A stretch of 64,000 nt of DNA, from NCBI GenBank assembly GCA_001179505.1, contig CDMY01000821.1, positions 1 to 64,000 on the forward strand, written 5' to 3'. Below the pieces are notes generated by a model, which saw only the letters and a list, made by a program, of their open reading frames with translations, made no database searches and was not told the origin of the DNA. This DNA comes from Vitrella brassicaformis CCMP3155. Lineage: Eukaryota > Protista > Chromerida. Of this stretch, positions 50,170 to 64,000 are shown piece by piece (the stretch's first letter is position 1; the number at the start of each line of letters is the position of its first letter). The translations under genes were made by a program, and so were the position numbers.

Positions 50170-53100
50170 TCAGTACCCCAGCCTGACATTGAGGTTCGTC
50201 CGTCCGTCCCCCTGCTGCTCGGTCGGCGGCACCCACAGCCCACCTGCACTCTCGTCCTGCGCGTCCACCTGCTCTGGCCGCCCCTCATCGCCATTGCTCG
50301 CCGTCACATCACGAGAAGCCGGCGGCATCGTGGGACCGATGACTCGCTTCTTGGCAGCCGGGCCAGATGATGCACCTGCAGCGGAACCCAACCAGCAAAG
50401 GAATCCTCCCTCCAGTGCAGAATAGAATCAGTGTGCAGGGCCGTGGATGCATACCATACAGTACCTGTCTCCTCTCTGCGTTTGGTGCCTCGCGTGTATA
50501 TCCTCTCGAGGCCGCCCGCAGTGACCTCCACCAGTGGGGTGCGGTCTGCCTTGGCCGTCTCGGGCAAAAGCTGCGGACCGAACTCCTCGTCTGCCATCGA
50601 CTCATCTGTAGGCGGGGGCTGCTTCAGCTCCTCTTTTGCAACGGCAGGCTCTTTCGGGATCGCTGCTGATGGTGGTGCCTTGGGCTTGGCTGGTTGGGGC
50701 TTCGGTGGCGCAGCTGACGGGGTGGGCACGGCGGTGTCCACGGCACCACTCTTGTCTGGCTCCTTTTTGTCGGCCGCCAGGTGTTCCTGCCCGCGCCTTG
50801 CGATGCGCAGGAGTCGCTCTGCGTCCTTGAGCTCACTGCTCGTGGACCGCAGCTTTGCCTCGGCTTCTTGTCTGAATGGATGGATGCATGGCCGGCAGGT
50901 ATGAGAACCAGTGAGATGGAGGGACAATCGTGCAATGGCTGTGTTTGGTGTGTGTGGTTTACTTACCTTTTTTGTTTGGCGAGCAGGGCCCTGTTCTTGG
51001 CCATGAACGCCTCGAGAGGGTCCAGACCTTGCTCAGTCTGCATACCATGCCATGCAGGACAGATGACGCATGCACACACACACACACACATCCGTCCATC
51101 CATGCATGCCATGCGGGGGTGATAGCATGTGACATGACAGGTGTGTGCCGTGCCGTGCCAGGCAGCTGAGCTCACCGCCCTCTGCTCCTCGGCCTTGTAC
51201 TGCGCCACCTCCTCTTGAAGCTTCGACTGGGCGCTCGTCAGAGATGCCACCTCCTCGGCCAAACTGACCAGAGCAGAGCCACAGACAGACAGACAGACAG
51301 ACAAGAAACAGAGAGAACCAGTTAGTTAGTTCTTCGGCTGCTACGGAGCGGGGCGGGGTCCCTCTCATTTTACTTACGTTTGTTCGGTCTTTACAGCGGG
51401 TTTCCCTGCGCCCTCTGCTTTTTTGGCCTGTCGGGTGCCCGACTCCTTTCTGCACAAAAGCGCAGTGCAAGATAGATAGCCTATTAACATATGTTCATCC
51501 ATGGCCATGAGTGGTCGTTGTGTGGTGTGGTGTGGTGTTGTGTGCGTACTTGGCCTGCTGTGTCCTGTCGAAGAACTCGTCATCGTCATCCTCCAGGGCC
51601 GTGTCAAAGTGATCCAACACCTACATGTCATGGGCGTGTGTGTATTCCATCCACACCAGACAGACAGACAGATGGACAGATGGACAGTGATGGGATGGGG
51701 CAGGGCAAGTGTCTGGGTGGTGTGTGTGGCCGACTGGCTGGGCTGACCCGCTTGCTGACGCTGCGTCCGCCACCGGTGGTCAAGCCTGCAAACGTCCACA
51801 CAGACGGACAGACCGACAGCACCATACACACAGTACACTTGGAAGTGTGCACGGCGCGTGTGTGTGAGTTAACTACCCACCCAGCGCCTGTTTGAGCGAT
51901 TCTTGTGCAAGAGCCACCTCCGACTCGAGCTCCTCCAGCCGACGGGATATGACAGATAGACGGTGGGTCTGACAAACAAACGGCCACCCAGCCACCCAGC
52001 CACCCATCACACAAAGGTGTTTGTTTGTTTGTGCAGAAATGGTGTGCTTGTGTAGTGTAGTGTACCTTACCTGGCCGTCTGTGAGTGTGTCGTCCTTGCT
52101 CTCGATCTTCTCCCTCTCGGTCCGCATCTGGTCCATCTTGCGCAGCCTCTCCTCTATCTGAATGAATGAGCCACAGCCAGCCAATACAATGTGCATATGC
52201 ATTGACACACATATCCCCCCCACGCATTATCGCATGATCTGATCCNNNNNNNNNNNNNNNNNNNNNNNNNNNNNNNNNNNNNNNNNNNNNNNNNNNNNNN
52301 NNNNNNNNNNNNNNNNNNNNNNNNNNNNNNNNNNNNNNNNNNNNNNNNNNNNNNNNNNNNNNNNNNNNNNNNNNNNNNNNNNNNNNNNNNNNNNNNNNNN
52401 NNNNNNNNNNNNNNNNNNNNNNNNNNNNNNNNNNNNNNNNNNNNNNNNNNNNNNNNNNNNNNNNNNNNNNNNNNNNNNNNNNNNNNNNNNNNNNNNNNNN
52501 NNNNNNNNNNNNNNNNNNNNNNNNNNNNNNNNNNNNNNNNNNNNNCCCCCCCCCCCCCCCCCCCCCCCACATTATTTACCTTGCCGACAGCAGCGAGTTG
52601 CTTGGCGGTGAGGTCCTTCTTCTCCTTGACGCGCTCCAGGTCCAAGAAGCCTACATGCCATGCACACACAGAACAAACAGACAAGCATGACATACATACC
52701 TACATTGCAACACACATCGAAGGATACGCCCATTTGACTGTCGCCTGCCCACCTGTGACCGGGTGGATAAGTTCGTGCTGTTGTTCGTGTTGTTCGTCCC
52801 TCAGTGCGTCCTCGGCGTCCATCGCCAGACCCCAGGACGCATCAGCAGCAGGGGCGGGGGCCGCTGCCGGGGCTGCAGGACTGCAATATATACACAAAGG
52901 ACACGTCATGGAGATGATGTCATAAATGCAGTGTGCCTCGTTATCCTTCCTTGATCTGATCTGACCTCGGTTGGGCTTTTGCTGCTTTTAAGGCCTCCAT
53001 CTCCTGCACAGCACACCAAAAGGGACAGAGGGTGCGCAGCGCACCAAAGCAAAGCAAAGCATGCACTCACCGGTAAAATTAGGAAGCACACACGTGCCGC

Positions 53101-54189: not shown

Positions 54190-54309
54190 ATGGAGGACCA
54201 CGCATCATCAGATACAGCGAGCGCCCCATCTGCAGCCACACAAGAGAACGTGCAACCGCAACCACCAGCAGGACCAACCGAGCAAGTCAAGGAGCAGCAA
54301 GAGGAAGGG

Positions 54310-54342
<33 letters not shown>

Positions 54343-56434
54343 GTCTTGGAGCCGCCGGCAGAGCAAGAACATTCGCCCAGCGAGAAGGAGCCGGAGGTGA
54401 CCACCCCGCCAAGGCCGTCTGTGGCAGATCCCGGCCCGTCGCTCGCTGAGGTCGGGCTGAAGGTCGGCTCATGGTTCGGCGGGCGGCTCAAGAACACGGC
54501 AAACTTCCTGCAGAGCAGAGGCAAAGAGATGATTGAGGTCAGACAGATCCAAGCACATGCCGGCCGCCAGACCAGTGCTCTCACGTGTTGTGTGTGTCGG
54601 ATTCTGTCAGACGGTGACCCCCGAGATCAAGGAGTTTGCCCAGCAGTTACAGAGCGACACCTCTCAGTTTGTGGCCAAGCAGAAGGAGCGGCTGATGCAC
54701 GTTGCGGCGCAATTTGATGAGGCTTTTGAGAGTCAGGGTGAGGGCCAGGAAGCCAGCCCCGCCAAGCAGGCTGCCGCCGACAGGGCGAGAAAGGCCACCG
54801 GCAGCAGCACCAAGCAAGAGGGGGAGGAGGAGGCACAGAGGGAGACGGATGGTGACCCGCAGCCGCCCGCCGGCAAACCGACCAGGAAGCTGCCCAAAGC
54901 ATATGAGAAAAAGTGGGGGACTGAGAGACAGACAACACAACACAACACAACACAACACAACACAGCACATGTGTGGGCTGGGCTCATCTGATCTGCATGT
55001 GATGTGTGTATCCATCATGGTTGTGGGTGTGTTGGTTCATGTGATGTGATGTGCTCAGTTTCAGCGCGCGTTTCATCTCCAAGTTGGAGGCTCTTCGTGA
55101 GGACGAGTCGACCTTCACGACGGACCCCCCCGAGCCGCCACACGACACCCCCCACCGCACCGGCACCTTCCAAGACTACCCCGTCGACCAATACGAGGTG
55201 GGTGAGGTAGTCCACACAGAGGGCGCACACGGACGCACGAGCGGATCGATCGGCCATTTGCGTCCGATGTGTTGTGTGAGTGAGTAGGTGTTAGAGTGGT
55301 GCCACGATGAGACGATTGCGACGCTCAAGGAGCGGCTAGGTGAGTGGGTGGGAATGATTAGCGCAGAATTAAGAAAAACACATACACCCAAGGTTACTTA
55401 CGTTGGGCCCTCCCTATGTGTGTGTGGATGCAATGCATCCCATCCATGCCCTCCCTCTGTCTGCAGTCCCATCACGTGTCGATGAGGAGCTCTTCTGGAA
55501 GAGGTGTCAAGGAAGGGAGATAGATAGACAGACTTCGGGCAAGGCAGGGTACCGTGCCATCGTTGGATGCATCTTTTGCGTTTGTCAGGTTTCTGTATCG
55601 GATCTACCTGCTCAAGTGTGAGGAGGCGCACCTCGCCGACCTCGTGCAGCGTAAGTGAGGGAGGCCCCACACCCACCACTCACACACGCAGGCAGGCTGT
55701 GCGAATGATCTCAGGCTGAGATCATTTGTCTGTTCTTCTCCCTCACAACGTGTCGTATGCGTTGTGTCTGTCTGTCTGTCCACAGGCGTCAAGAACACCG
55801 AGACGGGCGACGAAGAGGAGGTACTGTGACGTAACAAACGACGCCACACATGCTGCCTACCCTAATGCGGGCCTTGAACCAATCTTTGTTTGTGTGTCCC
55901 ACCCAGGAGTTCTCATGGGACGACGTGGACTCTCCCCGAGGCCACCCGGACAAGCACACACACGAGCACCCGTCGTCCGGCGGTGAAGCAGAGGGGCAAC
56001 ACGAGGAGGGCACCGAGCAGCCGTCCGTGAAGCAACCTCCCACTCCCATCCGGCTGACACCCGAGAGGCTCTCCCAGGGCGACAACACCCAAGACCAAGA
56101 GGAAGGTACACGAACGTGCATCGCATCCATCATCCCTAATGCGTGAATGAATGCGTTGATGGCTTGCATTGCAGCGGCTTGCGAGGTGGTGGACTCGCCT
56201 GTGGGTGTGCCGGGTGCGAGTCCTGATGGGCCCGCCAGCTCCGGCGCCTCTGACGACTTCGCCATCGTGCAGCCTGTCGAACAACACAAGGTAGGTGAGA
56301 GGGAGAGAGTGTGACGTGACCACACAGAGACGTGCACGCCTCCATTCATGTGCCGTGTGTGTGTGGTTGTGTGGTTGTGTGTGGTTGATGCGATGCAGGA
56401 GGAGGACAATGGCGAGTGGGTGTCGTGGGACTGA
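54190..56434 (+). CDS. BSD-domain-containing protein
   Basis: Poly-Q N-terminus; GSWFGG; LREDESTFTTDP; TLKERL|VPSRVDEELFWKR|FLYRIYLL (BSD FW motif); EFSWDD; DDFAIV; C-terminal EEDNGEWVSWD*. Confidence 0.85.
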
Positions 56435-56581: not shown

Positions 56582-59091
56582 ATGCGCTGTCCACAGCTGC
56601 AGGGGCGGGAGGGACACAGACAATCGTTCGATCTATCTCGAAGACCAGAATCCATTTCTAGCCCCAGTGCATTCGTTGTAAACAGACTTTCATTCACGAA
56701 CGTCATGAATGCGACGACGCCGTCAGAGCGTGTTGCCAACGTGTTCAATGAGCTCAACAGGCGGCTCCTGGCATCACCACCGGCCAGCGGTGAGTCGGCT
56801 CTCCCATCGCAGGCCAGTGTGACTGTCACCATCGGTGCCGGCACACGAGGTGCGGAGCGCATAGAAGCAAGCAGCCTCTCACACGAATGCACATGTGCCC
56901 AGAACAGTCGAAAGACAAGAGGGATGTCGTCTGTGTGTGTTGTCAGGCCAGCCTCTCGTCTACCGATTGACCAGCCTTGACGAAGGGTTTGTGCAGCAAG
57001 ACAGCGGCAGCAGGAGTGGACGGGCGTCCCACAACAACACCAGTGATTCGTCGTCTGTCGTGGTACTTACGTGCTTCTGTGTCAAAGAGGCATACATGGG
57101 AGCTCTCACACACGCGTTGATGTGTGTGCATGTATCCTATGATTCAGGTGCATTACTCATCGGTTGATTCGTTTGTGGATGTGACGTGTGGGCGGACGCC
57201 CTTCACGAGGGCTCTGGCTGAGAGGAGGGTCACTGTCAGGGGCGGCAGCCCACGGATGTACCGGTAAGCCAGCCAGCCAGCCAGCCAGTCAGCCAGCCAG
57301 CCAGCCAGCGAGTCAGCAAGGGCTCTGATGCGATGCACATGTGGTATGTATGTTCGATGGTGGTCGTTATATCTACCAGTGTGATGGCATCTCTGTTCAA
57401 GCGCGAGTCGCTCCCGTCTGCTTTGTCGAGCCCCGACGTCACGCGAACAGCTGGTGGGCGGGGCGTGCCTGCATCCCTCCATCCATCAATCAATCATTAA
57501 TGCCATGAACTCTGTTTGTCTGTGTGTATGGATGGTATGTATGTGTTCATTTATGTGCAGGTGGGAGCGGATATCCGCTGCTGCCCCGGTCGGCGAGCAA
57601 CCTGACGCTGCCCCAGCAGCCACAGTGGATGCCTGTACGTGGCAATCAATCGCAACACTCGCTACTCACACGAACGTGTGGATGTGTCTGTCTGTCTGTC
57701 TGTCTGTTTGCGTATGAGTGCAGAACGACGCCAGCCGTGTGTGTCTTGGCTGCAGCAAGCCCTTCAGAGCCATTGGGAGGCGGCGGCACCACTGCAGGTA
57801 AGGTACTCTACTCCCTCCCTCCCTCCCGCCCCCACACGCCTTACATACAGGTCGTGCGGAGGTCTGTTTTGCCACCGGTGTTCCCCTCTGCGGCCCTCGC
57901 CCCTGCCGTCGTTGCCCAAACAACGGGTGGGTCGGTGGGCGCAGTACACACCACACCCCCCACGCAGTGGGCCTTGATTGATACATGCATGATACGCCAT
58001 GCATGTCCCTGCCTGCAGGTGTGTCATTCGTGCTTCGCGGCGAGGAACACACACTCGCTGGGATCAGCCTCGACGGTAATAAGTAAAGGAATGCAGTGAA
58101 TGCCGTGTGCATCAGACAACACATGGGTGTATGAGCCGCGCACGTACGTGTGTGTGTGTGTGTGTGAGTGTGTGAGTGGAGTGCAGACGGACGCGAGCGG
58201 CGCCTCCTTGACGATGATTCAGGCGTCCGATGACAGCCACACATCTGCAGACGTCGACGGACTCAGGGAAAGGTGAGATCGGATTCCGCACACACCACAC
58301 ACACGACGAGGCAGGCAGGCAGGCCTGATGACCCACCCACCTGTGTGTGCTTGTGTCAGGCTTTATGCGTTGGAAACTTCGCTGGTGGATCGGGACGTCG
58401 ACTCGCTGATGAGAACGGCCACAATCACGCAATACGCACTGGCAGGGGCCATGCTGGTACGTACGAAGGGATGCATTAGCTGATCTGTCCTCACGAGTGC
58501 ACACACGCGCATCGCATCGCATCGCATCGCTTCCCCTGTCTGTGTGGTGTGCATCCCTCCCCCAAAACAGCTCGTGTTGACGGCCATGATCTCGTTTTGT
58601 GTGTCGAGTGTGTGGGTCCGGGTGGCGTGCACGACACTCGTGGGCGGCGGCCTGGCCGTCCTGTGCGCCAACCGCCAAGGCATGATCAACAGACGGGTGG
58701 GTGACGAGATGCTCACTTATATGATGGATGGGTGTGGCAGAACGTGTCTGTGTGAGAGTGGGTGTATTTGTGTGTGCGTTCGCTCAGGTTCACGTGTTTG
58801 TGGTTGCGTCGTTCGTGTACGTGTCGCTCAAGGCGGCCCAGCTGCAGACACGCAGGAAGCACATGAGCCAAGACGAAGAGGACCGGGTGGGTGAGCGGCA
58901 CGGTCTGTTTGAGTTCTGTTTATCTGTCATCGATTCATTCATGTGTGTCTGTCTGTCTGGACCAGTTGTGGGACCATAGGTATCGCGTCACGAGCAGATA
59001 TCTGTTTCTGCACATCAAGGCACTCAGAGGTAGGCGGGGCGGCCATGCGTCCCTGCAGACAGACAGACAGACAGACACATGTTCCCCTATG

Positions 59092-59125
<34 letters not shown>

Positions 59126-62100
59126 TGTGTGGTTCTGACAGGCTTCTGGGTTAAGGTACGCAAGGAGCAACACAGATTGACAAATGAGAATGTACACACG
59201 AGTGTATGTGCGTGTTGATGCGCAGCTCGGGCAGTACCTCAGCAGCAGAGCCGATGCCCTGCCGGAAGCGTTCGTCAGGTGCATAGCATCGCACACAGAC
59301 ACGCACACACATCCAGGTGCACATCTATCCGCTTGCTTACATGAAGCCCGGTGTGTGCTTTGTACGCTCAGCGAGTTGGGTCGTCTGCAGGACGCCATGC
59401 CCTCCGAGCCCTTTGAAGCCATCAAACACGCTGTCGAGACGGAGCTGAAGCGGCCGCTCAATGACCTCTTTGCGTCGTTCGACAAGGCACGCAAGCAAAC
59501 CAAACCCACGTGACAGCATAGCTAGCATCGTGTGTGTGTGTATGTGTGTGTGTGTGGATGATGTGTGCAGTCGCCTCTTGCGAGTGCGTCGATAGCCCAG
59601 GTGCACAGAGCGACACTCAAACAAGACGGCACCAAAGGTCAGGGCAGTGAGTGGGGGCAGGGCAACGAGCCCTTTGCATTTCTGGCACACCACACTGACT
59701 GACTCTTTTGGCTTCTCTGATCGAATCGATCAGTGGTCGTCAAAGTGCAGGTAAGCTTTGGCAGTGGCATTGACTGGCACGTGTGTGTACTATATGGGTG
59801 CAACTACTCCCTATGTGTGTGTGTGTGTTGTCTATGTGGTTGATTCATTCAGCACGCGCACATCGACCGGATCATGCGTCAGGATGTCTCGGACCTTTCT
59901 GCCATCTGCTGGATTGTCGCCAAGCTCGAACCAAGGCATGGCATGCACACTGAGCGAGAGAGTGAGGCCACTGCACACATCTCCCTCGTGTGTGCCTGCC
60001 TGCCTGTGTGTGTGTGGGTCCATCCATCGCCAGGTACGATTTCCGTCCGGTCATCAGCGAGTGGCAGCGGCTGGCCATCAAGGTATGTGGGTCGCTCGCA
60101 TCCACTCCACACAGCCATCCACAAGGCGTGCAATGCAATGCGACGCAATGATTGATGCCTGCAGGAGCTTGATTTCACGATTGAGGGCAGCAACCAGCGG
60201 AGGGCCAGGGAGGCACTCATCAAGGCCAACATACAGGTGGGCATGTGCGGACGGGTTTCGGGTTTAGGGCTTAGGGTTTCGGGTTTAGGGTTAAGGGTTT
60301 ATAAACCCTAAGCCCTAAACCCTACGTGCCCACGTTTGTCCACACGCGCACAAACCACACCACACTGAGTGAGACAGGTGGGTGCAATCATGGTGTGTGC
60401 CTGCAGGTGTCGATTCCGCGGTTGGTCGACAGCCTGATAACGAAGCGCGTCATCGTTATGGAATTTGCAGAGGTTCGCATCGCATCGACGTTTCCCTCAT
60501 GTATTGTCTACGAAATGCGTCTGTCCGTCAGGGCTTCAAGATCACCGACTCTGCGCAGCTGCTGGAGCACCGTGTGACCAACGAAGAGCTCACAAAAGTG
60601 TTCGGGCGGCTGGTGGATGCGTAAGGACAGACAGACAGAGACAGACGTAGCACAGCTCGTGCGCTCATCCATCCATCCATCCATCCACCAACACAAACAC
60701 GTGGTGTGGTCTCTTCCTTGGTGTGTGTGGCGTGTCAGGTTTGCATACGGCATGTTCTGCGACGGGCACTTCAACGGTGGGTGGGGCGATGCGATGCGAT
60801 GCACTCACTGCACACGAGTGCACACACGCATACATAGGTATATCCATGGCCGGCCGGACCTGTATACACACACGTTCAGGCGACCCTCACCCTGGCAATA
60901 TTCTGCTGCACGTCAAAGAGCAAGAGGGAGACCGACAGCTCACCGGTAGGTAGTGAGCCATACACACACACGCACACACACACATGCACATCCACACACA
61001 CAAATTTCTGTCTCTATGTGTTTGTGGTGTGATGCATAGTGACTTTGTTGGACTGGGGTTTGGCCAAGACGTTCGAGCCTCCTGGACAGGTGGCTATCAA
61101 GAGCAAATACAAACGCAGGTAAGTACAACAACAGGGGCACCACGGCACGGGCACCCGTTTTGATGCCTCCCTCCGTGTCACGGATGCGTGCATGCAGGTC
61201 GCGGCCCATGATGCGATACATTGACTCCCGTCTGGCCTTCGCCAAACTGGTGGCCTGTGTGGCCGCCAAAAACAGCAACGGGTACGTGTGGACAGACTGG
61301 ATGGATGTACCTCTGTACACTCTGAATATACGCATCGCATCGACGTCGGTTCGTCTGTCTGTCTGTCTGTCTGCCTGTCTGCCCGTTTCTACAACCGTGC
61401 AGGTTGATCGAGGCCTTTGAGGAGCTGGGTAGGCACAGCACAGCACAGCATCATCTGATCTGTTGCTAGATAGATCTCTGTGTACGTCACGTGTGCGATA
61501 TATGCGACCGACCGATGTGGAGGTTTTGAGTTCTTTCACGACGAGATTGAGCCGCAGATGGGGATAGAGGTCATGCGCTTTGTGATGCGCGACACACAGA
61601 CCAAGGAGAGGGCGGCCAGCATCACCAAACGGAGGTGACAGACACACACACCGACACACAGACAGCAACCATACCGTGGTATGGGTGGCTGACATTGGCT
61701 GCGTGAGTGCAGGATGCGTGCTGACATGGACAAGTTCCAGCGCGAGCAGAAGGAGAAGAAACGAGACCCCGTTGACGCATTCCCCGGTGAGTACTCACCA
61801 CGCACCGCACACCCACACGTGCACTGCACTGCTCACACACACATGGCTACCAGTCTAGGTGTGTCGTGTCACATCCATCAGGTGAGATCATTTTCTTCTT
61901 TCGAGTCACTTTCCTGCTGCACGGACTCGCGAGTATACACACACACACACACTGAGATGAATGACATCCATGTGCTAATGAATGGTCCATCGCTGTCTGT
62001 CTGTCGTCTTGTGTTGTGTGGATGCGACACAGGTCGTCTGGCGATTCGGTATGCATTCCTGAGCACGCTCGAGCGGCGGGCGACTGAGGCCGTCAACAGA

Positions 62101-64000
62101 CACAGACTCGAAACATGCCACACACATGACATCGGTACCTACGGCAATGAAATGCGCATGGCGCATGCGCCTTCATGCCATGCGTTGTGGGCCGGGTGTG
62201 GTGTGTTCCATGGGTGTGTGTGTGTCCAGATGACAATGCAGCTCTGTTGCGGATACGCGACAAAGTCAATCACGTATGTGCATGGCGTGCGTGGGCAGCA
62301 ACTGATGGAACCTCTTGTTTGGACACGTGTGTGTGTGTGTTTTGTGGCTGTGTGCGTGTGTGTGTGCAGGATGGTGGCGACTCGTGCCCCATCCGCTCGA
62401 TGCCTGAATACACCAAGGCCTACGGACTGCACAAACACGTAACGACACCCCACCTTTAGCCATCATGGCCATAGGTAGCGTGAATCCGTGTGCGTGTTTG
62501 TTTGCTTGTTTGTTTGTGTGCAGAACGGCGCTGTGAGCGGCATCGAGAGGGCGTTGCAGGAGTGCATGGACGAGCTGTGGAGAGACGAGGTGCGGATGGG
62601 AGCACGTCAACATGCCTTGGAATGTATGTTTCAATGTGTGTGGGTATTGCTGTGCGTGTGTGTGTGTGTGTTCAGTGGGTGCTCGGGGCCCAGTGCAGCG
62701 TTTACGTGAGCAGCCAGAAGGTGGCCGACGTGTGTGTGGGGCAGTGCGGGCCGCTCGATCCAATGCCCGTCAGACCAGGTAGGTCAACCCACACACACCT
62801 TACGCACACACACATACGTACACCTACGTGTTGTGAATGAGTCTGCTCGTGCGTGTGCAGATACGGTCTTCAACACATTCAGCGTGACCAAGGCCATAGG
62901 GGCGACAGCTGTGCTGCAGCTGGTCGACCGCAACGTCATCCACCTCGATACAAAAATTGCCGACATCTGGTGAAAGCCTGCGGTGTTGCACACTCATACC
63001 ACACACGGCGTTGGTATGAACGGTTTGTATAGGCCCGGGTTCGGTCAAAACGGCAAGGAGAACATCACTGTCGCGCAGGCACTCGCACACACGGCTGGTG
63101 GGTGGGTGGGGGGGCTGGTGGGTATGCACGTGTCACTCACTCATTGCTGTCATTCTATGCTGTTGTGGGACTTAAGGTCTGTACCACCTGATCCCGCCCA
63201 ACATGACGACGAGCAAGCTGTGTGACTTCAACCTCATGGCACACGAGATCGCCAAAGCCAAACCTCTCCACGAACCGGGAACACGACAGGCACGTATCCA
63301 TCGTATGCTATGTACGTCTCGTCCAGTCCACTCCCCCTTTCATTTATGTTATGTTATCGGCGGTGCAGGTGTATCACTACATCACCTACGGCTGGCTCAT
63401 TGGCGGCATCATCCAACATGCACTCCAAACCACCACCGACACCCACACCGACACCCAGTCCACAGGCACCGCCGCAAAGGACCACCACCAACAGGACGGC
63501 GGGTACGGTACCTTCACACAGATGCATGCGCAACCAACCCACAGCATATAGCCATCCCGCCTCCCTCCCCCGTGTGCAGGTCGATCGTGTCTTGCTTCGT
63601 CCGTAATTCGATTGCTGCGCCGCTGGGTTTGGCTGATGAGCTCATCGTGGGCCTCACACCGGACGTCATGGCCAGAAGGGGTGAGTGAGTCAGCCAGATG
63701 GATGGATGGATGGATGGGTGCATGATAGGCATGTACGCACACACGTCTGTGTTCTTGGGTGTGCAGGCAAGGTGGCGAGTCTGCACAAGCCTCCGTCCAC
63801 AACAGTCAGCGAACAGGTGGGTGCGCCGCGCCGCGCCCTGGTCAAGTCACGTGTGTGCGCTCTGTGTCTATCGGCATGTGTCTGTGTCTGTGTCTGTGTA
63901 GGAGGTGGAGAGCGCTATAGAGCGGCTGGAGGACACACTACAGGACGGAGAGGGCGGCACCAAGGAAACGTACACAGACAGACAGACAGACAGTAGGAAG
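56582..64000 (+). CDS. FYVE zinc finger - TM - ABC1/UbiB atypical kinase - beta-lactamase-like serine hydrolase fusion protein (3' end outside window; start 56582 or 56705)
   Basis: FYVE: WMP|NDASRVCLGC..RRHHCR|SCGGLFCHRC..R|VCHSC. ABC1: GFWVK|LGQYLSSRAD, LQDAMP, PLASASIAQVHRA, VVVKVQ, ELDFTIEG, VMEFAE, GDPHPGNIL, LLDWGLAK. Beta-lactamase: TFSVTK, HTAG, YHYITYGW. The linking exons are all in frame. Confidence 0.8.
60237..60333. repeat. Telomere-like palindromic hairpin at the 5' end of an ABC1-gene intron
   Basis: (GGGTTTA/C)-type units, then a perfect 16-bp palindrome agggtttataaaccct and CCCTAA units; flanked by gtgggcatgt...acgtgcccac (10-bp inverted repeat, one mismatch) starting at the GT donor. 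Confidence 0.85.

What the first reader, a model, noticed from the sequence alone, without database searches (positions are those of the whole stretch)
57561..59160. FYVE finger fused in frame through a TM segment to an ABC1/UbiB kinase-beta-lactamase
Seen: a complete FYVE (WMPND, RRHHCR, RVC, 8 Cys) continues through consecutive GT-AG exons 58019-58075 (phase 0), 58187-58272 (phase 2), 58360-58456 (phase 0) and 58571-58696 (phase 0) into 58788 onward, with no stop. A hydrophobic stretch (YALAGAML|LVLTAMISFCVSSVWVRVACTTLVGGGLAVLCA) precedes RRVHVFVVASFVY...LWD...GFWVKLGQYLSSRAD. Established: FYVE binds PI3P; ABC1/UbiB kinases act in quinone and lipid metabolism, mostly in mitochondria and plastoglobules; an ABC1 plus beta-lactamase two-domain form exists in plants; PI3P-marked vesicles are linked to apicoplast biogenesis in Toxoplasma. 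Inference: a previously undescribed four-part architecture directing an atypical kinase/ATPase and a serine hydrolase to PI3P membranes (endosome, autophagosome or the outer plastid membrane), forming a one-polypeptide lipid-sensing and remodelling module.
Basis: partly seen in the sequence, partly recalled or inferred. Interest (0 to 1): 0.82.

Follow-up and report, generated by a model that had tools for sequence, protein, structure and literature searches.

The report
FYVE-anchored UbiB kinase–esterase fusion gene
The FYVE finger really is part of one long gene with a membrane anchor, an ABC1/UbiB kinase-like domain and a beta-lactamase-fold esterase, but this domain order already sits uncharacterised in public databases (for example in Capsaspora), so it is a new member of a conserved lipid-handling protein family and not a new architecture.

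Summary
From ATG 56705 to 63969 I traced 43 exons and 1122 codons with no stop. All introns are GT-AG except three GC-AG. The gene runs off the window end.

Spliced RNA contigs from three studies directly join the linker, membrane and ABC1 exons.

Independent support is strong:
- A paralog on contig C271 carries the last FYVE zinc pair and the ABC1 KxGQ motif in one uninterrupted 427-codon open frame.
- Capsaspora owczarzaki "ABC1 family protein" (1470 aa) has SCP2, FYVE, ABC1 and beta-lactamase in this order and aligns colinearly with the window exons.
- A metagenome contig encodes the same architecture as a single 5079-nt ORF.
- One relative has PX where FYVE sits. Others add START.

So the architecture is not new. 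It is an uncharacterised family, and I found no paper describing it.

Likely function (inferred): a hairpin-anchored, PI3P-addressed lipid extraction and ester-hydrolysis module.

This scan noted the same fusion on another piece of this genome (s1-218472, probably the C271 paralog).

The parts
56705..56834 (+). Putative first coding exon (ATG at 56705). The N-terminal helix resembles the N-termini of the paralog and of P0001.
   Evidence: Open frame, GT donor at 56835, and an in-frame join to 56947. In run X7 the RNA contig runs 524 letters upstream of 56945. The start codon is inferred.
56947..57453 (+). Three N-terminal exons (56947-57062, 57148-57263, 57380-57453). This is the position of SCP2 in relatives, but it is only weakly SCP2-like here.
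   Evidence: RNA contigs join 57061/57147 directly (table 8). hhalign to the family's SCP2 profile aligns 13 columns with P 0.033. There is no Pfam hit.
57561..58075 (+). FYVE zinc finger in four exons (57561-57634, 57724-57797, 57851-57926, 58019-58075).
   Evidence: Motifs read directly. Pfam FYVE 24.0 and 15.4 bits on consecutive exons. Own-genome scan 25.9 bits. Best solved-structure hit is the Vps27 FYVE.
58076..58186 (+). Critical intron between the FYVE part and the rest. It is GT-AG and 111 nt long, with an in-frame TGA at 58097-58099 if retained. A second RNA path converges at its acceptor.
   Evidence: The contig geometry and depth show that the FYVE contig does not cover 58076-58099 yet runs 29 letters past 58075.
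58187..58456 (+). Linker exons (58187-58272, 58360-58456): an acidic stretch with an internal ATG at 58214, then a probable coiled segment.
   Evidence: The ABC1 contig starts 85 letters before the piece at 58358, which I place at 58186-58270 from depth. Its junctions 58456/58571 and 58696/58788 are direct (table 8).
58430..58669 (+). Hydrophobic membrane anchor, about 45 residues, spanning intron 58457-58570. Probably a two-helix hairpin.
   Evidence: Hydropathy of the model, residues 289-333. Relatives mostly have two TM segments between FYVE/PX and ABC1.
58788..59029 (+). Conserved pre-ABC1 helices (exons 58788-58886, 58966-59029).
   Evidence: tblastn to Capsaspora P0005 residues 600-632. 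RNA contig pieces.
59142..61932 (+). ABC1/UbiB kinase-like domain in about 19 small exons. These include microexons 59142-59155 (14 nt, GFWVK) and 59734-59750 (17 nt, VVVKVQ).
   Evidence: KxGQ, ASASIAQVH, VVVKVQ, ELDF, DPHPGN and DWG read directly. Pfam ABC1 on exons. RNA joints and the microexon letters (tables 5 and 5c).
62676..64000 (+). Beta-lactamase-fold serine hydrolase (family VIII esterase-like). It runs off the window end and continues at least 384 nt beyond.
   Evidence: Pfam PF00144 39 bits on exon 62861-62969. Colinear tblastn to P0005. RNA joints.
62881..62892 (+). Catalytic S-x-x-K motif (SVTK).
   Evidence: Read directly from exon 62861-62969.

Best explanation
This is one protein-coding gene of a chromerid-like alga. 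The assembly is 72.7 Mb in 1064 contigs, which I believe is Vitrella brassicaformis, from memory and unverified.

Its product has, in order: an N-terminal region that is SCP2 in relatives, a canonical FYVE finger, a short linker, a hydrophobic hairpin anchor, an ABC1/UbiB atypical kinase/ATPase domain, and a beta-lactamase-fold hydrolase of the family VIII carboxylesterase type.

It belongs to a conserved, uncharacterised eukaryotic family. The family includes Capsaspora owczarzaki 'ABC1 family protein', several protist transcripts and metagenome ORFs, and a second copy in this genome. Land plants keep only the ABC1 plus hydrolase core.

Shown: gene structure, domain identities and family membership.

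Inferred (about 0.4 for the full chain): the hairpin holds the protein in one membrane with both halves in the cytosol. FYVE (PX in some relatives) addresses it to PI3P-bearing endosomal or autophagic membranes. The UbiB domain, the lipid-carrier domain and the esterase then extract, hydrolyse and move a hydrophobic lipid there, such as an isoprenoid quinone or a sterol or prenyl ester.

A FYVE-less transcript starting inside intron 58076-58186 may coexist with the fused one.
For: - Gene structure. An open 1122-codon chain over 43 exons.
- RNA. All four runs laid hold intron-less contigs. They join 58456/58571 and 58696/58788 and every listed intron from 59279 to 62860, and they contain the two microexons.
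- The critical junction, by length. The FYVE-side contigs in X7 and X8 both run 388 letters past 57259. That equals 4+74+74+74+76+57+29, so they extend 29 letters past 58075.
- The critical junction, by depth. In bin 57900-58099 the depth equals 83 covered bases (27+57 expected), so 58076-58099 is not covered.
- The critical junction, by contig start. The ABC1 contig in X1, X7 and X8 starts at G58186, the first base shared by the spliced and unspliced forms. This gives the 30-letter overlap expected between neighbouring k=31 contigs (k=31 is my knowledge of Logan).
- Paralog on C271. Exon 132141-131052 runs from RRLCNEC to FVKFGQYLGG without interruption. ABC1 scores 88.8 bits, beta-lactamase 84.3 bits, FYVE 20.5 bits, and SCP2 by hhalign has P 91.6%, E 8e-7.
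- Relatives. P0005 has SCP2 52-138, FYVE 209-261, ABC1 681-923 and beta-lactamase 1055-1445, and is colinear with the window exons. P0012 adds START. P0026 is a single 5079-nt ORF on a metagenome contig. P0001 has PX in place of FYVE.
- Hydrolase type. It is closest to carboxylesterases (E 2e-39, against about 1e-8 for AmpC).
- UbiB background. UbiB proteins are linked to cellular CoQ distribution and to a membrane contact site (PMC8346625, PMC10214851).
Against: - The joint 58075 to 58187 was not among the rows printed by read laying, so it rests on arithmetic and not on a displayed read.
- The ABC1 contig has higher depth than the FYVE contig in X8 and X1. A second path converges at the acceptor. 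Many transcripts may therefore lack FYVE, although depth per contig is a poor measure.
- The WxxD motif reads WMPN-D, with N at the usual D position.
- SCP2 is not statistically supported in this copy.
- No lipid, membrane or activity datum exists for any family member.
- This genome's own annotated proteins are withheld from the protein tools, so no independent gene model was seen.
Confidence: 0.8

Rival explanations
1. There are two adjacent genes. A small FYVE protein ends at the TGA at 58097-58099 in the unspliced 'intron'. A separate ABC1/hydrolase gene starts at its own promoter, for example at ATG 58214. The in-frame GT-AG join would be coincidence or rare read-through.
For: A stop follows soon after 58075 if the intron is retained. 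An ATG lies at 58214 in the next exon. The ABC1 contig ends at the acceptor in three assemblies and has higher depth than the FYVE contig in X8 and X1.
Against: - The FYVE contig does not cover 58076-58099 yet extends exactly 29 letters further, matching a k-1 overlap with the ABC1 contig.
- The paralog has FYVE and ABC1 in a single exon.
- Orthologous single proteins, and one single ORF, have the same order.
- The window exons are colinear with Capsaspora from FYVE to the hydrolase.
Confidence: 0.05
2. Two isoforms come from one locus. One is the full fusion. The other is a FYVE-less form transcribed from inside intron 58076-58186 and translated from ATG 58214. Only part of the protein pool would then be PI3P-addressed.
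For: A branch sits at the acceptor: the ABC1 contig starts at the base shared by two upstream paths. Depth in bin 58100-58299 exceeds what the two known contigs explain, while 58076-58099 is uncovered. The contig depths are unequal.
Against: The second path could simply be unspliced pre-mRNA. Contig depth is one figure per contig and is biased toward the 3' end. The repeat at 58135-58181 was masked by the tool, so the second path was not seen directly.
Confidence: 0.3
3. The fusion is real but the FYVE finger does not read PI3P. It would serve as a structural or protein-binding zinc finger, and targeting would be set by the membrane anchor alone, for example to mitochondria or the plastid as for most ABC1 proteins.
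For: The WxxD motif is altered (WMPN-D here, WAPN-G in the paralog). Most characterised UbiB/ABC1 proteins are mitochondrial or plastidial (PMC8346625; plant plastoglobule ABC1Ks from my own knowledge).
Against: RRHHCR and RVC are intact. The family's FYVE is closest to proven PI3P binders. The FYVE to PX exchange at the same position in P0001 argues that PI3P reading is the selected function.
Confidence: 0.15

Closest known systems
Capsaspora owczarzaki ATCC 30864 'ABC1 family protein' (P0005, 1470 aa; NCBI/UniRef)
   Same: Same order: FYVE, two-segment membrane anchor, conserved pre-ABC1 helices, ABC1, then a beta-lactamase-fold hydrolase. It aligns colinearly with the window exons and has the same motifs (RRHHCR, GFWVK-GQY, ASIAQVHRA, VVVKVQH, DPHxGN, FSxTK).
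   Different: It has a clear SCP2 domain (42 bits) and a canonical WAHD motif, and its FYVE-to-TM linker is longer. About 31% identity over aligned parts. The window copy is split into more than 43 exons.
Paralog in the same genome (contig C271, about 133000-128000, minus strand)
   Same: SCP2, FYVE, TM region, ABC1 and beta-lactamase in the same order. It shares the WxPN variant of the FYVE N-terminal motif.
   Different: It has few, long exons. Its FYVE-to-ABC1 linker is longer and has more TM segments. It is closer to the PX-bearing P0001 group (about 40% identity). The S-x-x-K serine position appears to read D-L-S-K, so the hydrolase may be inactive (read by eye, not tested).
Plant ABC1 plus beta-lactamase proteins (about 960 aa; e.g. 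Selaginella SELMODRAFT_443434, Actinidia LOC130764990)
   Same: The two-domain core: ABC1 followed by a PF00144 hydrolase. 40-41% identity to Capsaspora over the core.
   Different: No SCP2, no FYVE or PX, and no hydrophobic anchor by my hydropathy scan.
Yeast Cqd1/Cqd2 and COQ8/ADCK3 (UbiB family)
   Same: Same kinase-like fold and signature motifs. Solved COQ8A matches the family at E about 1e-21. There is a functional link to lipid (CoQ) distribution and to a membrane contact site (PMC8346625, PMC10214851).
   Different: These are mitochondrial single-domain proteins with no PI3P reader, no lipid-carrier domain and no hydrolase.
Family VIII carboxylesterases (e.g. PDB 5gmx, EstA 5gkv)
   Same: Best solved relatives of the C-terminal domain (E 2e-39 for Capsaspora, 1.5e-8 for the paralog). 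S-x-x-K nucleophile motif.
   Different: These are free-standing bacterial enzymes. The substrate of the eukaryotic fused domain is unknown.

Membership tests
FYVE zinc finger (PF01363) | Eight Cys in four CxxC pairs with FYVE spacing | tested here: met
   CLGC, CRSC, CHRC and CHSC lie over exons 57724-58075.
FYVE zinc finger (PF01363) | R(R/K)HHCR and RVC basic motifs | tested here: met
   RRRHHC|R spans the 57797/57851 junction and R|VC spans the 57926/58019 junction.
FYVE zinc finger (PF01363) | N-terminal WxxD motif | tested here: inconclusive
   It reads W-M-P-N-D, with N at the D position and D one residue later. The paralog has WAPNG.
FYVE zinc finger (PF01363) | Profile score over Pfam's cut-off (27.8 bits) | tested here: inconclusive
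   Exon by exon the scores are 24.0 bits (profile 6-27) and 15.4 bits (profile 29-47). They are colinear and sum to more than the cut-off, but each is below it. The joined model was not searched, by rule.
FYVE zinc finger (PF01363) | PI3P binding | not testable with these tools
   Needs a lipid-binding assay.
UbiB/ABC1 atypical kinase (PF03109) | KxGQ motif, Ala-rich loop (AAASIAQVH type), invariant Lys, catalytic DPHxGN, DxG | tested here: met
   K-LGQ (59142-59235), ASASIAQVH, VVVKVQ, ELDF, DPHPGN and DWG read from the exons.
UbiB/ABC1 atypical kinase (PF03109) | Profile match | tested here: met
   Exon 59568-59630 scores 22.9 bits, at the cut-off. It is 38.1 bits with its neighbours in the frame. 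Exon 59373-59486 scores 19.5 bits. tblastn is colinear with the ABC1 domain of P0005.
Beta-lactamase / PBP-like serine hydrolase (PF00144) | S-x-x-K nucleophile motif and profile match | tested here: met
   FSVTK at 62878-62892. A single exon scores 39 bits, above the cut-off of 27.
Beta-lactamase / PBP-like serine hydrolase (PF00144) | Second (Tyr) and third (K/H-T/S-G) motifs | not tested
   A Tyr-containing YHYITYGW is present at 63369 onward. The third motif lies beyond the window end and was not mapped.
SCP2 sterol/lipid carrier (PF02036) | Profile match over about 100 residues N-terminal of FYVE | tested here: inconclusive
   There was no Pfam hit on the exons, no BLASTP hit, and no significant hit with a family HMM. 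hhalign aligns 13 columns with P 0.033 at the colinear place. The paralog is clear. The joined-model test was left out.
SCP2-FYVE/PX-TM-ABC1-hydrolase family (Capsaspora type) | Colinear homology from FYVE through the anchor and pre-ABC1 helices to the hydrolase | tested here: met
   tblastn of P0005 against the window gives ordered hits from 57781 to 64384.
SCP2-FYVE/PX-TM-ABC1-hydrolase family (Capsaspora type) | All parts on one mRNA | tested here: met
   Direct for 58186 onward.

The most novel reading that the evidence does not exclude
A conserved but unstudied eukaryotic protein family joins five kinds of module: a lipid-carrier domain (SCP2, sometimes START), an interchangeable PI3P reader (FYVE or PX), a membrane hairpin, a UbiB ATPase/kinase and a family VIII-type esterase.

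It would be the first UbiB machine working at endosomal or autophagic PI3P membranes instead of in mitochondria or plastids. It would extract, de-esterify and hand over isoprenoid quinones or sterol/prenyl esters. That would be a natural 'Rosetta stone' for what UbiB domains do, and for how CoQ-like lipids travel outside mitochondria.
Probability: 0.3. Interest if true: 0.75.

Novelty: new member of a known kind. Interest (0 to 1): 0.55.

Why it matters
UbiB/ABC1 proteins are ancient and disease-linked, yet their biochemical role is still debated. Current evidence points to lipid (CoQ) extraction and distribution (PMC8346625).

A natural fusion that repeatedly couples this domain to lipid-carrier domains, to a PI3P address tag (FYVE or PX) and to an esterase is strong comparative evidence for a lipid-trafficking role away from mitochondria. 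It also names concrete partners to test.

The family occurs in a culturable relative of animals (Capsaspora) and twice in this chromerid-like alga, so the hypothesis can be tested experimentally. For genome annotation, the case shows that a chain of more than 43 tiny exons, including 14-nt and 17-nt microexons and GC-AG introns, encodes one protein.

Tried and rejected
- Word search with the stop-free frame window:57509-58096 found nothing. Records of this genome appear to be withheld (note), so the blank means nothing.
- The one big representative search, with the paralog's 427-aa exon, gave only two hits and no self-hit. It nevertheless led to P0001 and from there to the family.
- SCP2 in the window copy was not supported. 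Pfam on the exons, BLASTP to the Capsaspora SCP2 and a home-made family HMM over all six frames gave nothing significant.
- 'FYVE transcript ends in the retained intron' was rejected. Bin 57900-58099 shows 83 covered bases, not about 107.
- Spliced-leader trans-splicing at acceptor 58187 was considered and rejected. The contig carries no extra leader letters upstream; exactly 85 letters precede 58358 in three runs.
- The low-GC bin at 52000-52499 is only an assembly gap.
- Literature searches for FYVE with ABC1, UbiB, ABC1K or beta-lactamase found no description of the architecture. The library is limited to open-access papers and bioRxiv preprints.
- The joined spliced model was built only inside scripts, to count stops and compute hydropathy. 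It was sent to no search, fold or family tool.


Full report
**What is in the sequence**

I re-read the region and checked every border in a script. Exons 57561-57634, 57724-57797, 57851-57926 and 58019-58075 encode a complete FYVE finger: QWMP|ND, CLGC, RRRHHC|R, SCGGLFCHRC, and KQR|VCHSC.

Pfam FYVE matches the second and third exons at consecutive profile positions. The second covers 6-27 (24.0 bits, E 4e-5) and the third covers 29-47 (15.4 bits). A six-frame scan of the whole genome also picks up 57721-57801.

I extended the chain in both directions. From ATG 56705 to 63969 there are 43 exons and 1122 codons with no stop. Forty-two introns separate them. All are GT-AG except GC-AG at 59487, 59936 and 63290. 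The gene runs off the window. Homology to the hydrolase domain continues at least to 64384 of the contig.

**RNA evidence**

The one run search returned eight holders, and I laid four of them. All four carry intron-less contigs, so they derive from RNA. They come from three studies.

One contig runs through the linker, the membrane exon, ABC1 and into the hydrolase. It is 4197 nt in X7, 3714 nt in X8 and 3263 nt in X1. The record coordinates are contiguous across 58456/58571 and 58696/58788. Fourteen of the fifteen printed joints are true introns, lying between 59279 and 62860. The 14-nt and 17-nt microexons appear as 'letters between' (tables 5, 5c, 8).

A second contig covers the upstream exons and joins 57061/57147 directly. 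It is 1142 nt in X7 and 617 nt in X8.

Three quantitative facts bear on it.

- **Length.** Both upstream contigs run exactly 388 letters past 57259. The exons give 4+74+74+74+76+57 = 359, which leaves 29 letters beyond 58075.
- **Depth.** In bin 57900-58099 the depth equals 83 covered bases at that contig's depth in both runs (56.8 at depth 136.9, and 6.21 at depth 15). That is the 27+57 exon bases and nothing from 58076-58099. The 29 letters therefore do not lie in the intron.
- **Contig start.** In X1, X7 and X8 the downstream contig has exactly 85 letters before the piece at 58358. It therefore starts at G58186. This base is identical to G58075 and is the first base shared by a spliced and an unspliced upstream path.

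Neighbouring contigs of a k=31 graph overlap by 30 letters, and G plus 29 letters is exactly that. That Logan uses k=31 is my own knowledge; the tool text only speaks of 31-letter words.

I take this as strong indirect evidence of two things. The FYVE exon is spliced to 58187. A second path, either pre-mRNA or an internal start, meets it there.

**Independent genomic evidence**

The family scans of the whole genome showed a second place where FYVE and ABC1 hits are neighbours, on contig C271.

There, on the minus strand, the FYVE finger is in three exons. The third exon, 132141-131052, is one uninterrupted open frame. It runs from RRLCNEC (the fourth zinc pair) through several hydrophobic segments to FVKFGQYLGG (the ABC1 KxGQ motif). 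No splicing model is needed there to link FYVE and ABC1.

The same gene has these matches:
- ABC1, 88.8 bits.
- A 408-codon beta-lactamase exon, 84.3 bits.
- An SCP2 tail just upstream of FYVE. Pfam gives E 0.057. hhalign to the family's SCP2 gives P 91.6% and E 8e-7.

**Relatives elsewhere**

The big search with that exon found P0001 (2056 aa). It has SCP2 30-97, PX 155-231, ABC1 895-1117 and beta-lactamase 1386-1593.

Word searches from P0001 and then from P0005 found the following:
- **P0005**, the public Capsaspora owczarzaki 'ABC1 family protein': SCP2 52-138, FYVE 209-261, ABC1 681-923, beta-lactamase 1055-1445.
- **P0012**, a complete transcript ORF with the same four domains plus START.
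- **P0026**, with the same four domains, encoded as a single 5079-nt ORF on a 27-kb metagenome contig.
- **Land-plant proteins** with only ABC1 plus beta-lactamase.

Capsaspora P0005 aligns colinearly with the window exons from RRHHCR to ANGHxSARALAK. The alignment includes the pre-ABC1 helices and all the kinase-like motifs.

The window gene is therefore a member of an existing, database-visible family. I found no paper that describes this family.

**Domain details**

- **FYVE.** The family's FYVE is closest to proven PI3P binders: WDFY3, EEA1, endofin, Hrs and Vps27. The window's 24-residue exon also hits Vps27 first. The WxxD motif is altered to WMPN-D.
- **PX swap.** PX in place of FYVE in P0001 argues that PI3P reading is the conserved role of this position.
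- **Hydrolase.** This domain is much closer to family VIII carboxylesterases (E 2e-39) than to AmpC (about 1e-8).
- **Membrane anchor.** The window model has one 45-residue hydrophobic stretch. Most relatives have two TM segments between FYVE/PX and ABC1, and plants have none. I read this as a hairpin that leaves both halves on the cytosolic side. This is an inference.
- **SCP2.** In the window copy it is only suggested, by 13 aligned columns with P 0.033.

**Mechanism**

The gene structure and the domains are shown. The function is inferred from three things: the domain set, the recurrent partners (SCP2, START, FYVE or PX) and what is known of UbiB proteins (PMC8346625, PMC10214851). On that basis I propose a membrane-anchored, PI3P-addressed module that extracts, de-esterifies and transfers a hydrophobic lipid.

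I give about 0.9 to 'one gene, one fused protein', about 0.6 to PI3P addressing, and about 0.4 to the whole mechanism.

**Rivals**

- Two separate genes: 0.05.
- A coexisting FYVE-less isoform: 0.3. This is compatible with the main reading.
- A FYVE finger that does not read PI3P: 0.15.

**Verdict**

The value of the finding lies in the family as comparative evidence for UbiB function. This scan also noted the same fusion on another piece of this genome (s1-218472). I reached the C271 paralog independently before seeing that note.

Noticed in passing
window 59142-59155, 59734-59750 and 61403-61428: Very small exons of 14, 17 and 26 nt lie inside the ABC1 domain. They carry the KxGQ lysine (GFWVK) and the invariant lysine (VVVKVQ). 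The 14-nt and 17-nt exons appear verbatim in RNA contigs of two runs.
   Followed up: yes
window 59487-59570, 59936-60033 and 63290-63368: Three GC-AG introns occur in one gene. The 59936 intron matches a printed RNA joint; the other two rest on the open frame only. That is 3 of 42 introns.
   Followed up: partly
window 60253-60322 (inside intron 60237-60406): Telomere-like TTTAGGG-type repeats are arranged as a perfect 20-nt inverted repeat, forming a palindrome centred near 60301.
   Followed up: partly
window 58076-58186: A second RNA path converges at acceptor 58187, while 58076-58099 is not covered. This could be an internal transcription start giving a FYVE-less isoform from ATG 58214.
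   Followed up: partly
L018 (G000:C271) about 128900-128880, minus strand: In the paralog's hydrolase exon, the place of the S-x-x-K serine seems to read D-L-S-K. That copy may be a pseudo-enzyme. This was read by eye from the translation and not aligned formally.
   Followed up: no
window 54190-55300, plus strand: The upstream neighbour gene starts MEDHASS and has a long poly-Q run. One of its exons reads ARFISKLEALREDESTFTTDP, which looks BSD-domain-like to me. It was not scanned.
   Followed up: no
window 52247-52545: A run of N (an assembly gap) followed by poly-C. It explains the low-GC bin in the composition profile.
   Followed up: yes
window 57268-57310, 57675-57717 and 58135-58181: Introns of this gene carry short microsatellites (GCCA, CTGT and GT runs). 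This is the pattern other notes of this scan discuss as a possible splicing aid. It was not examined here.
   Followed up: no
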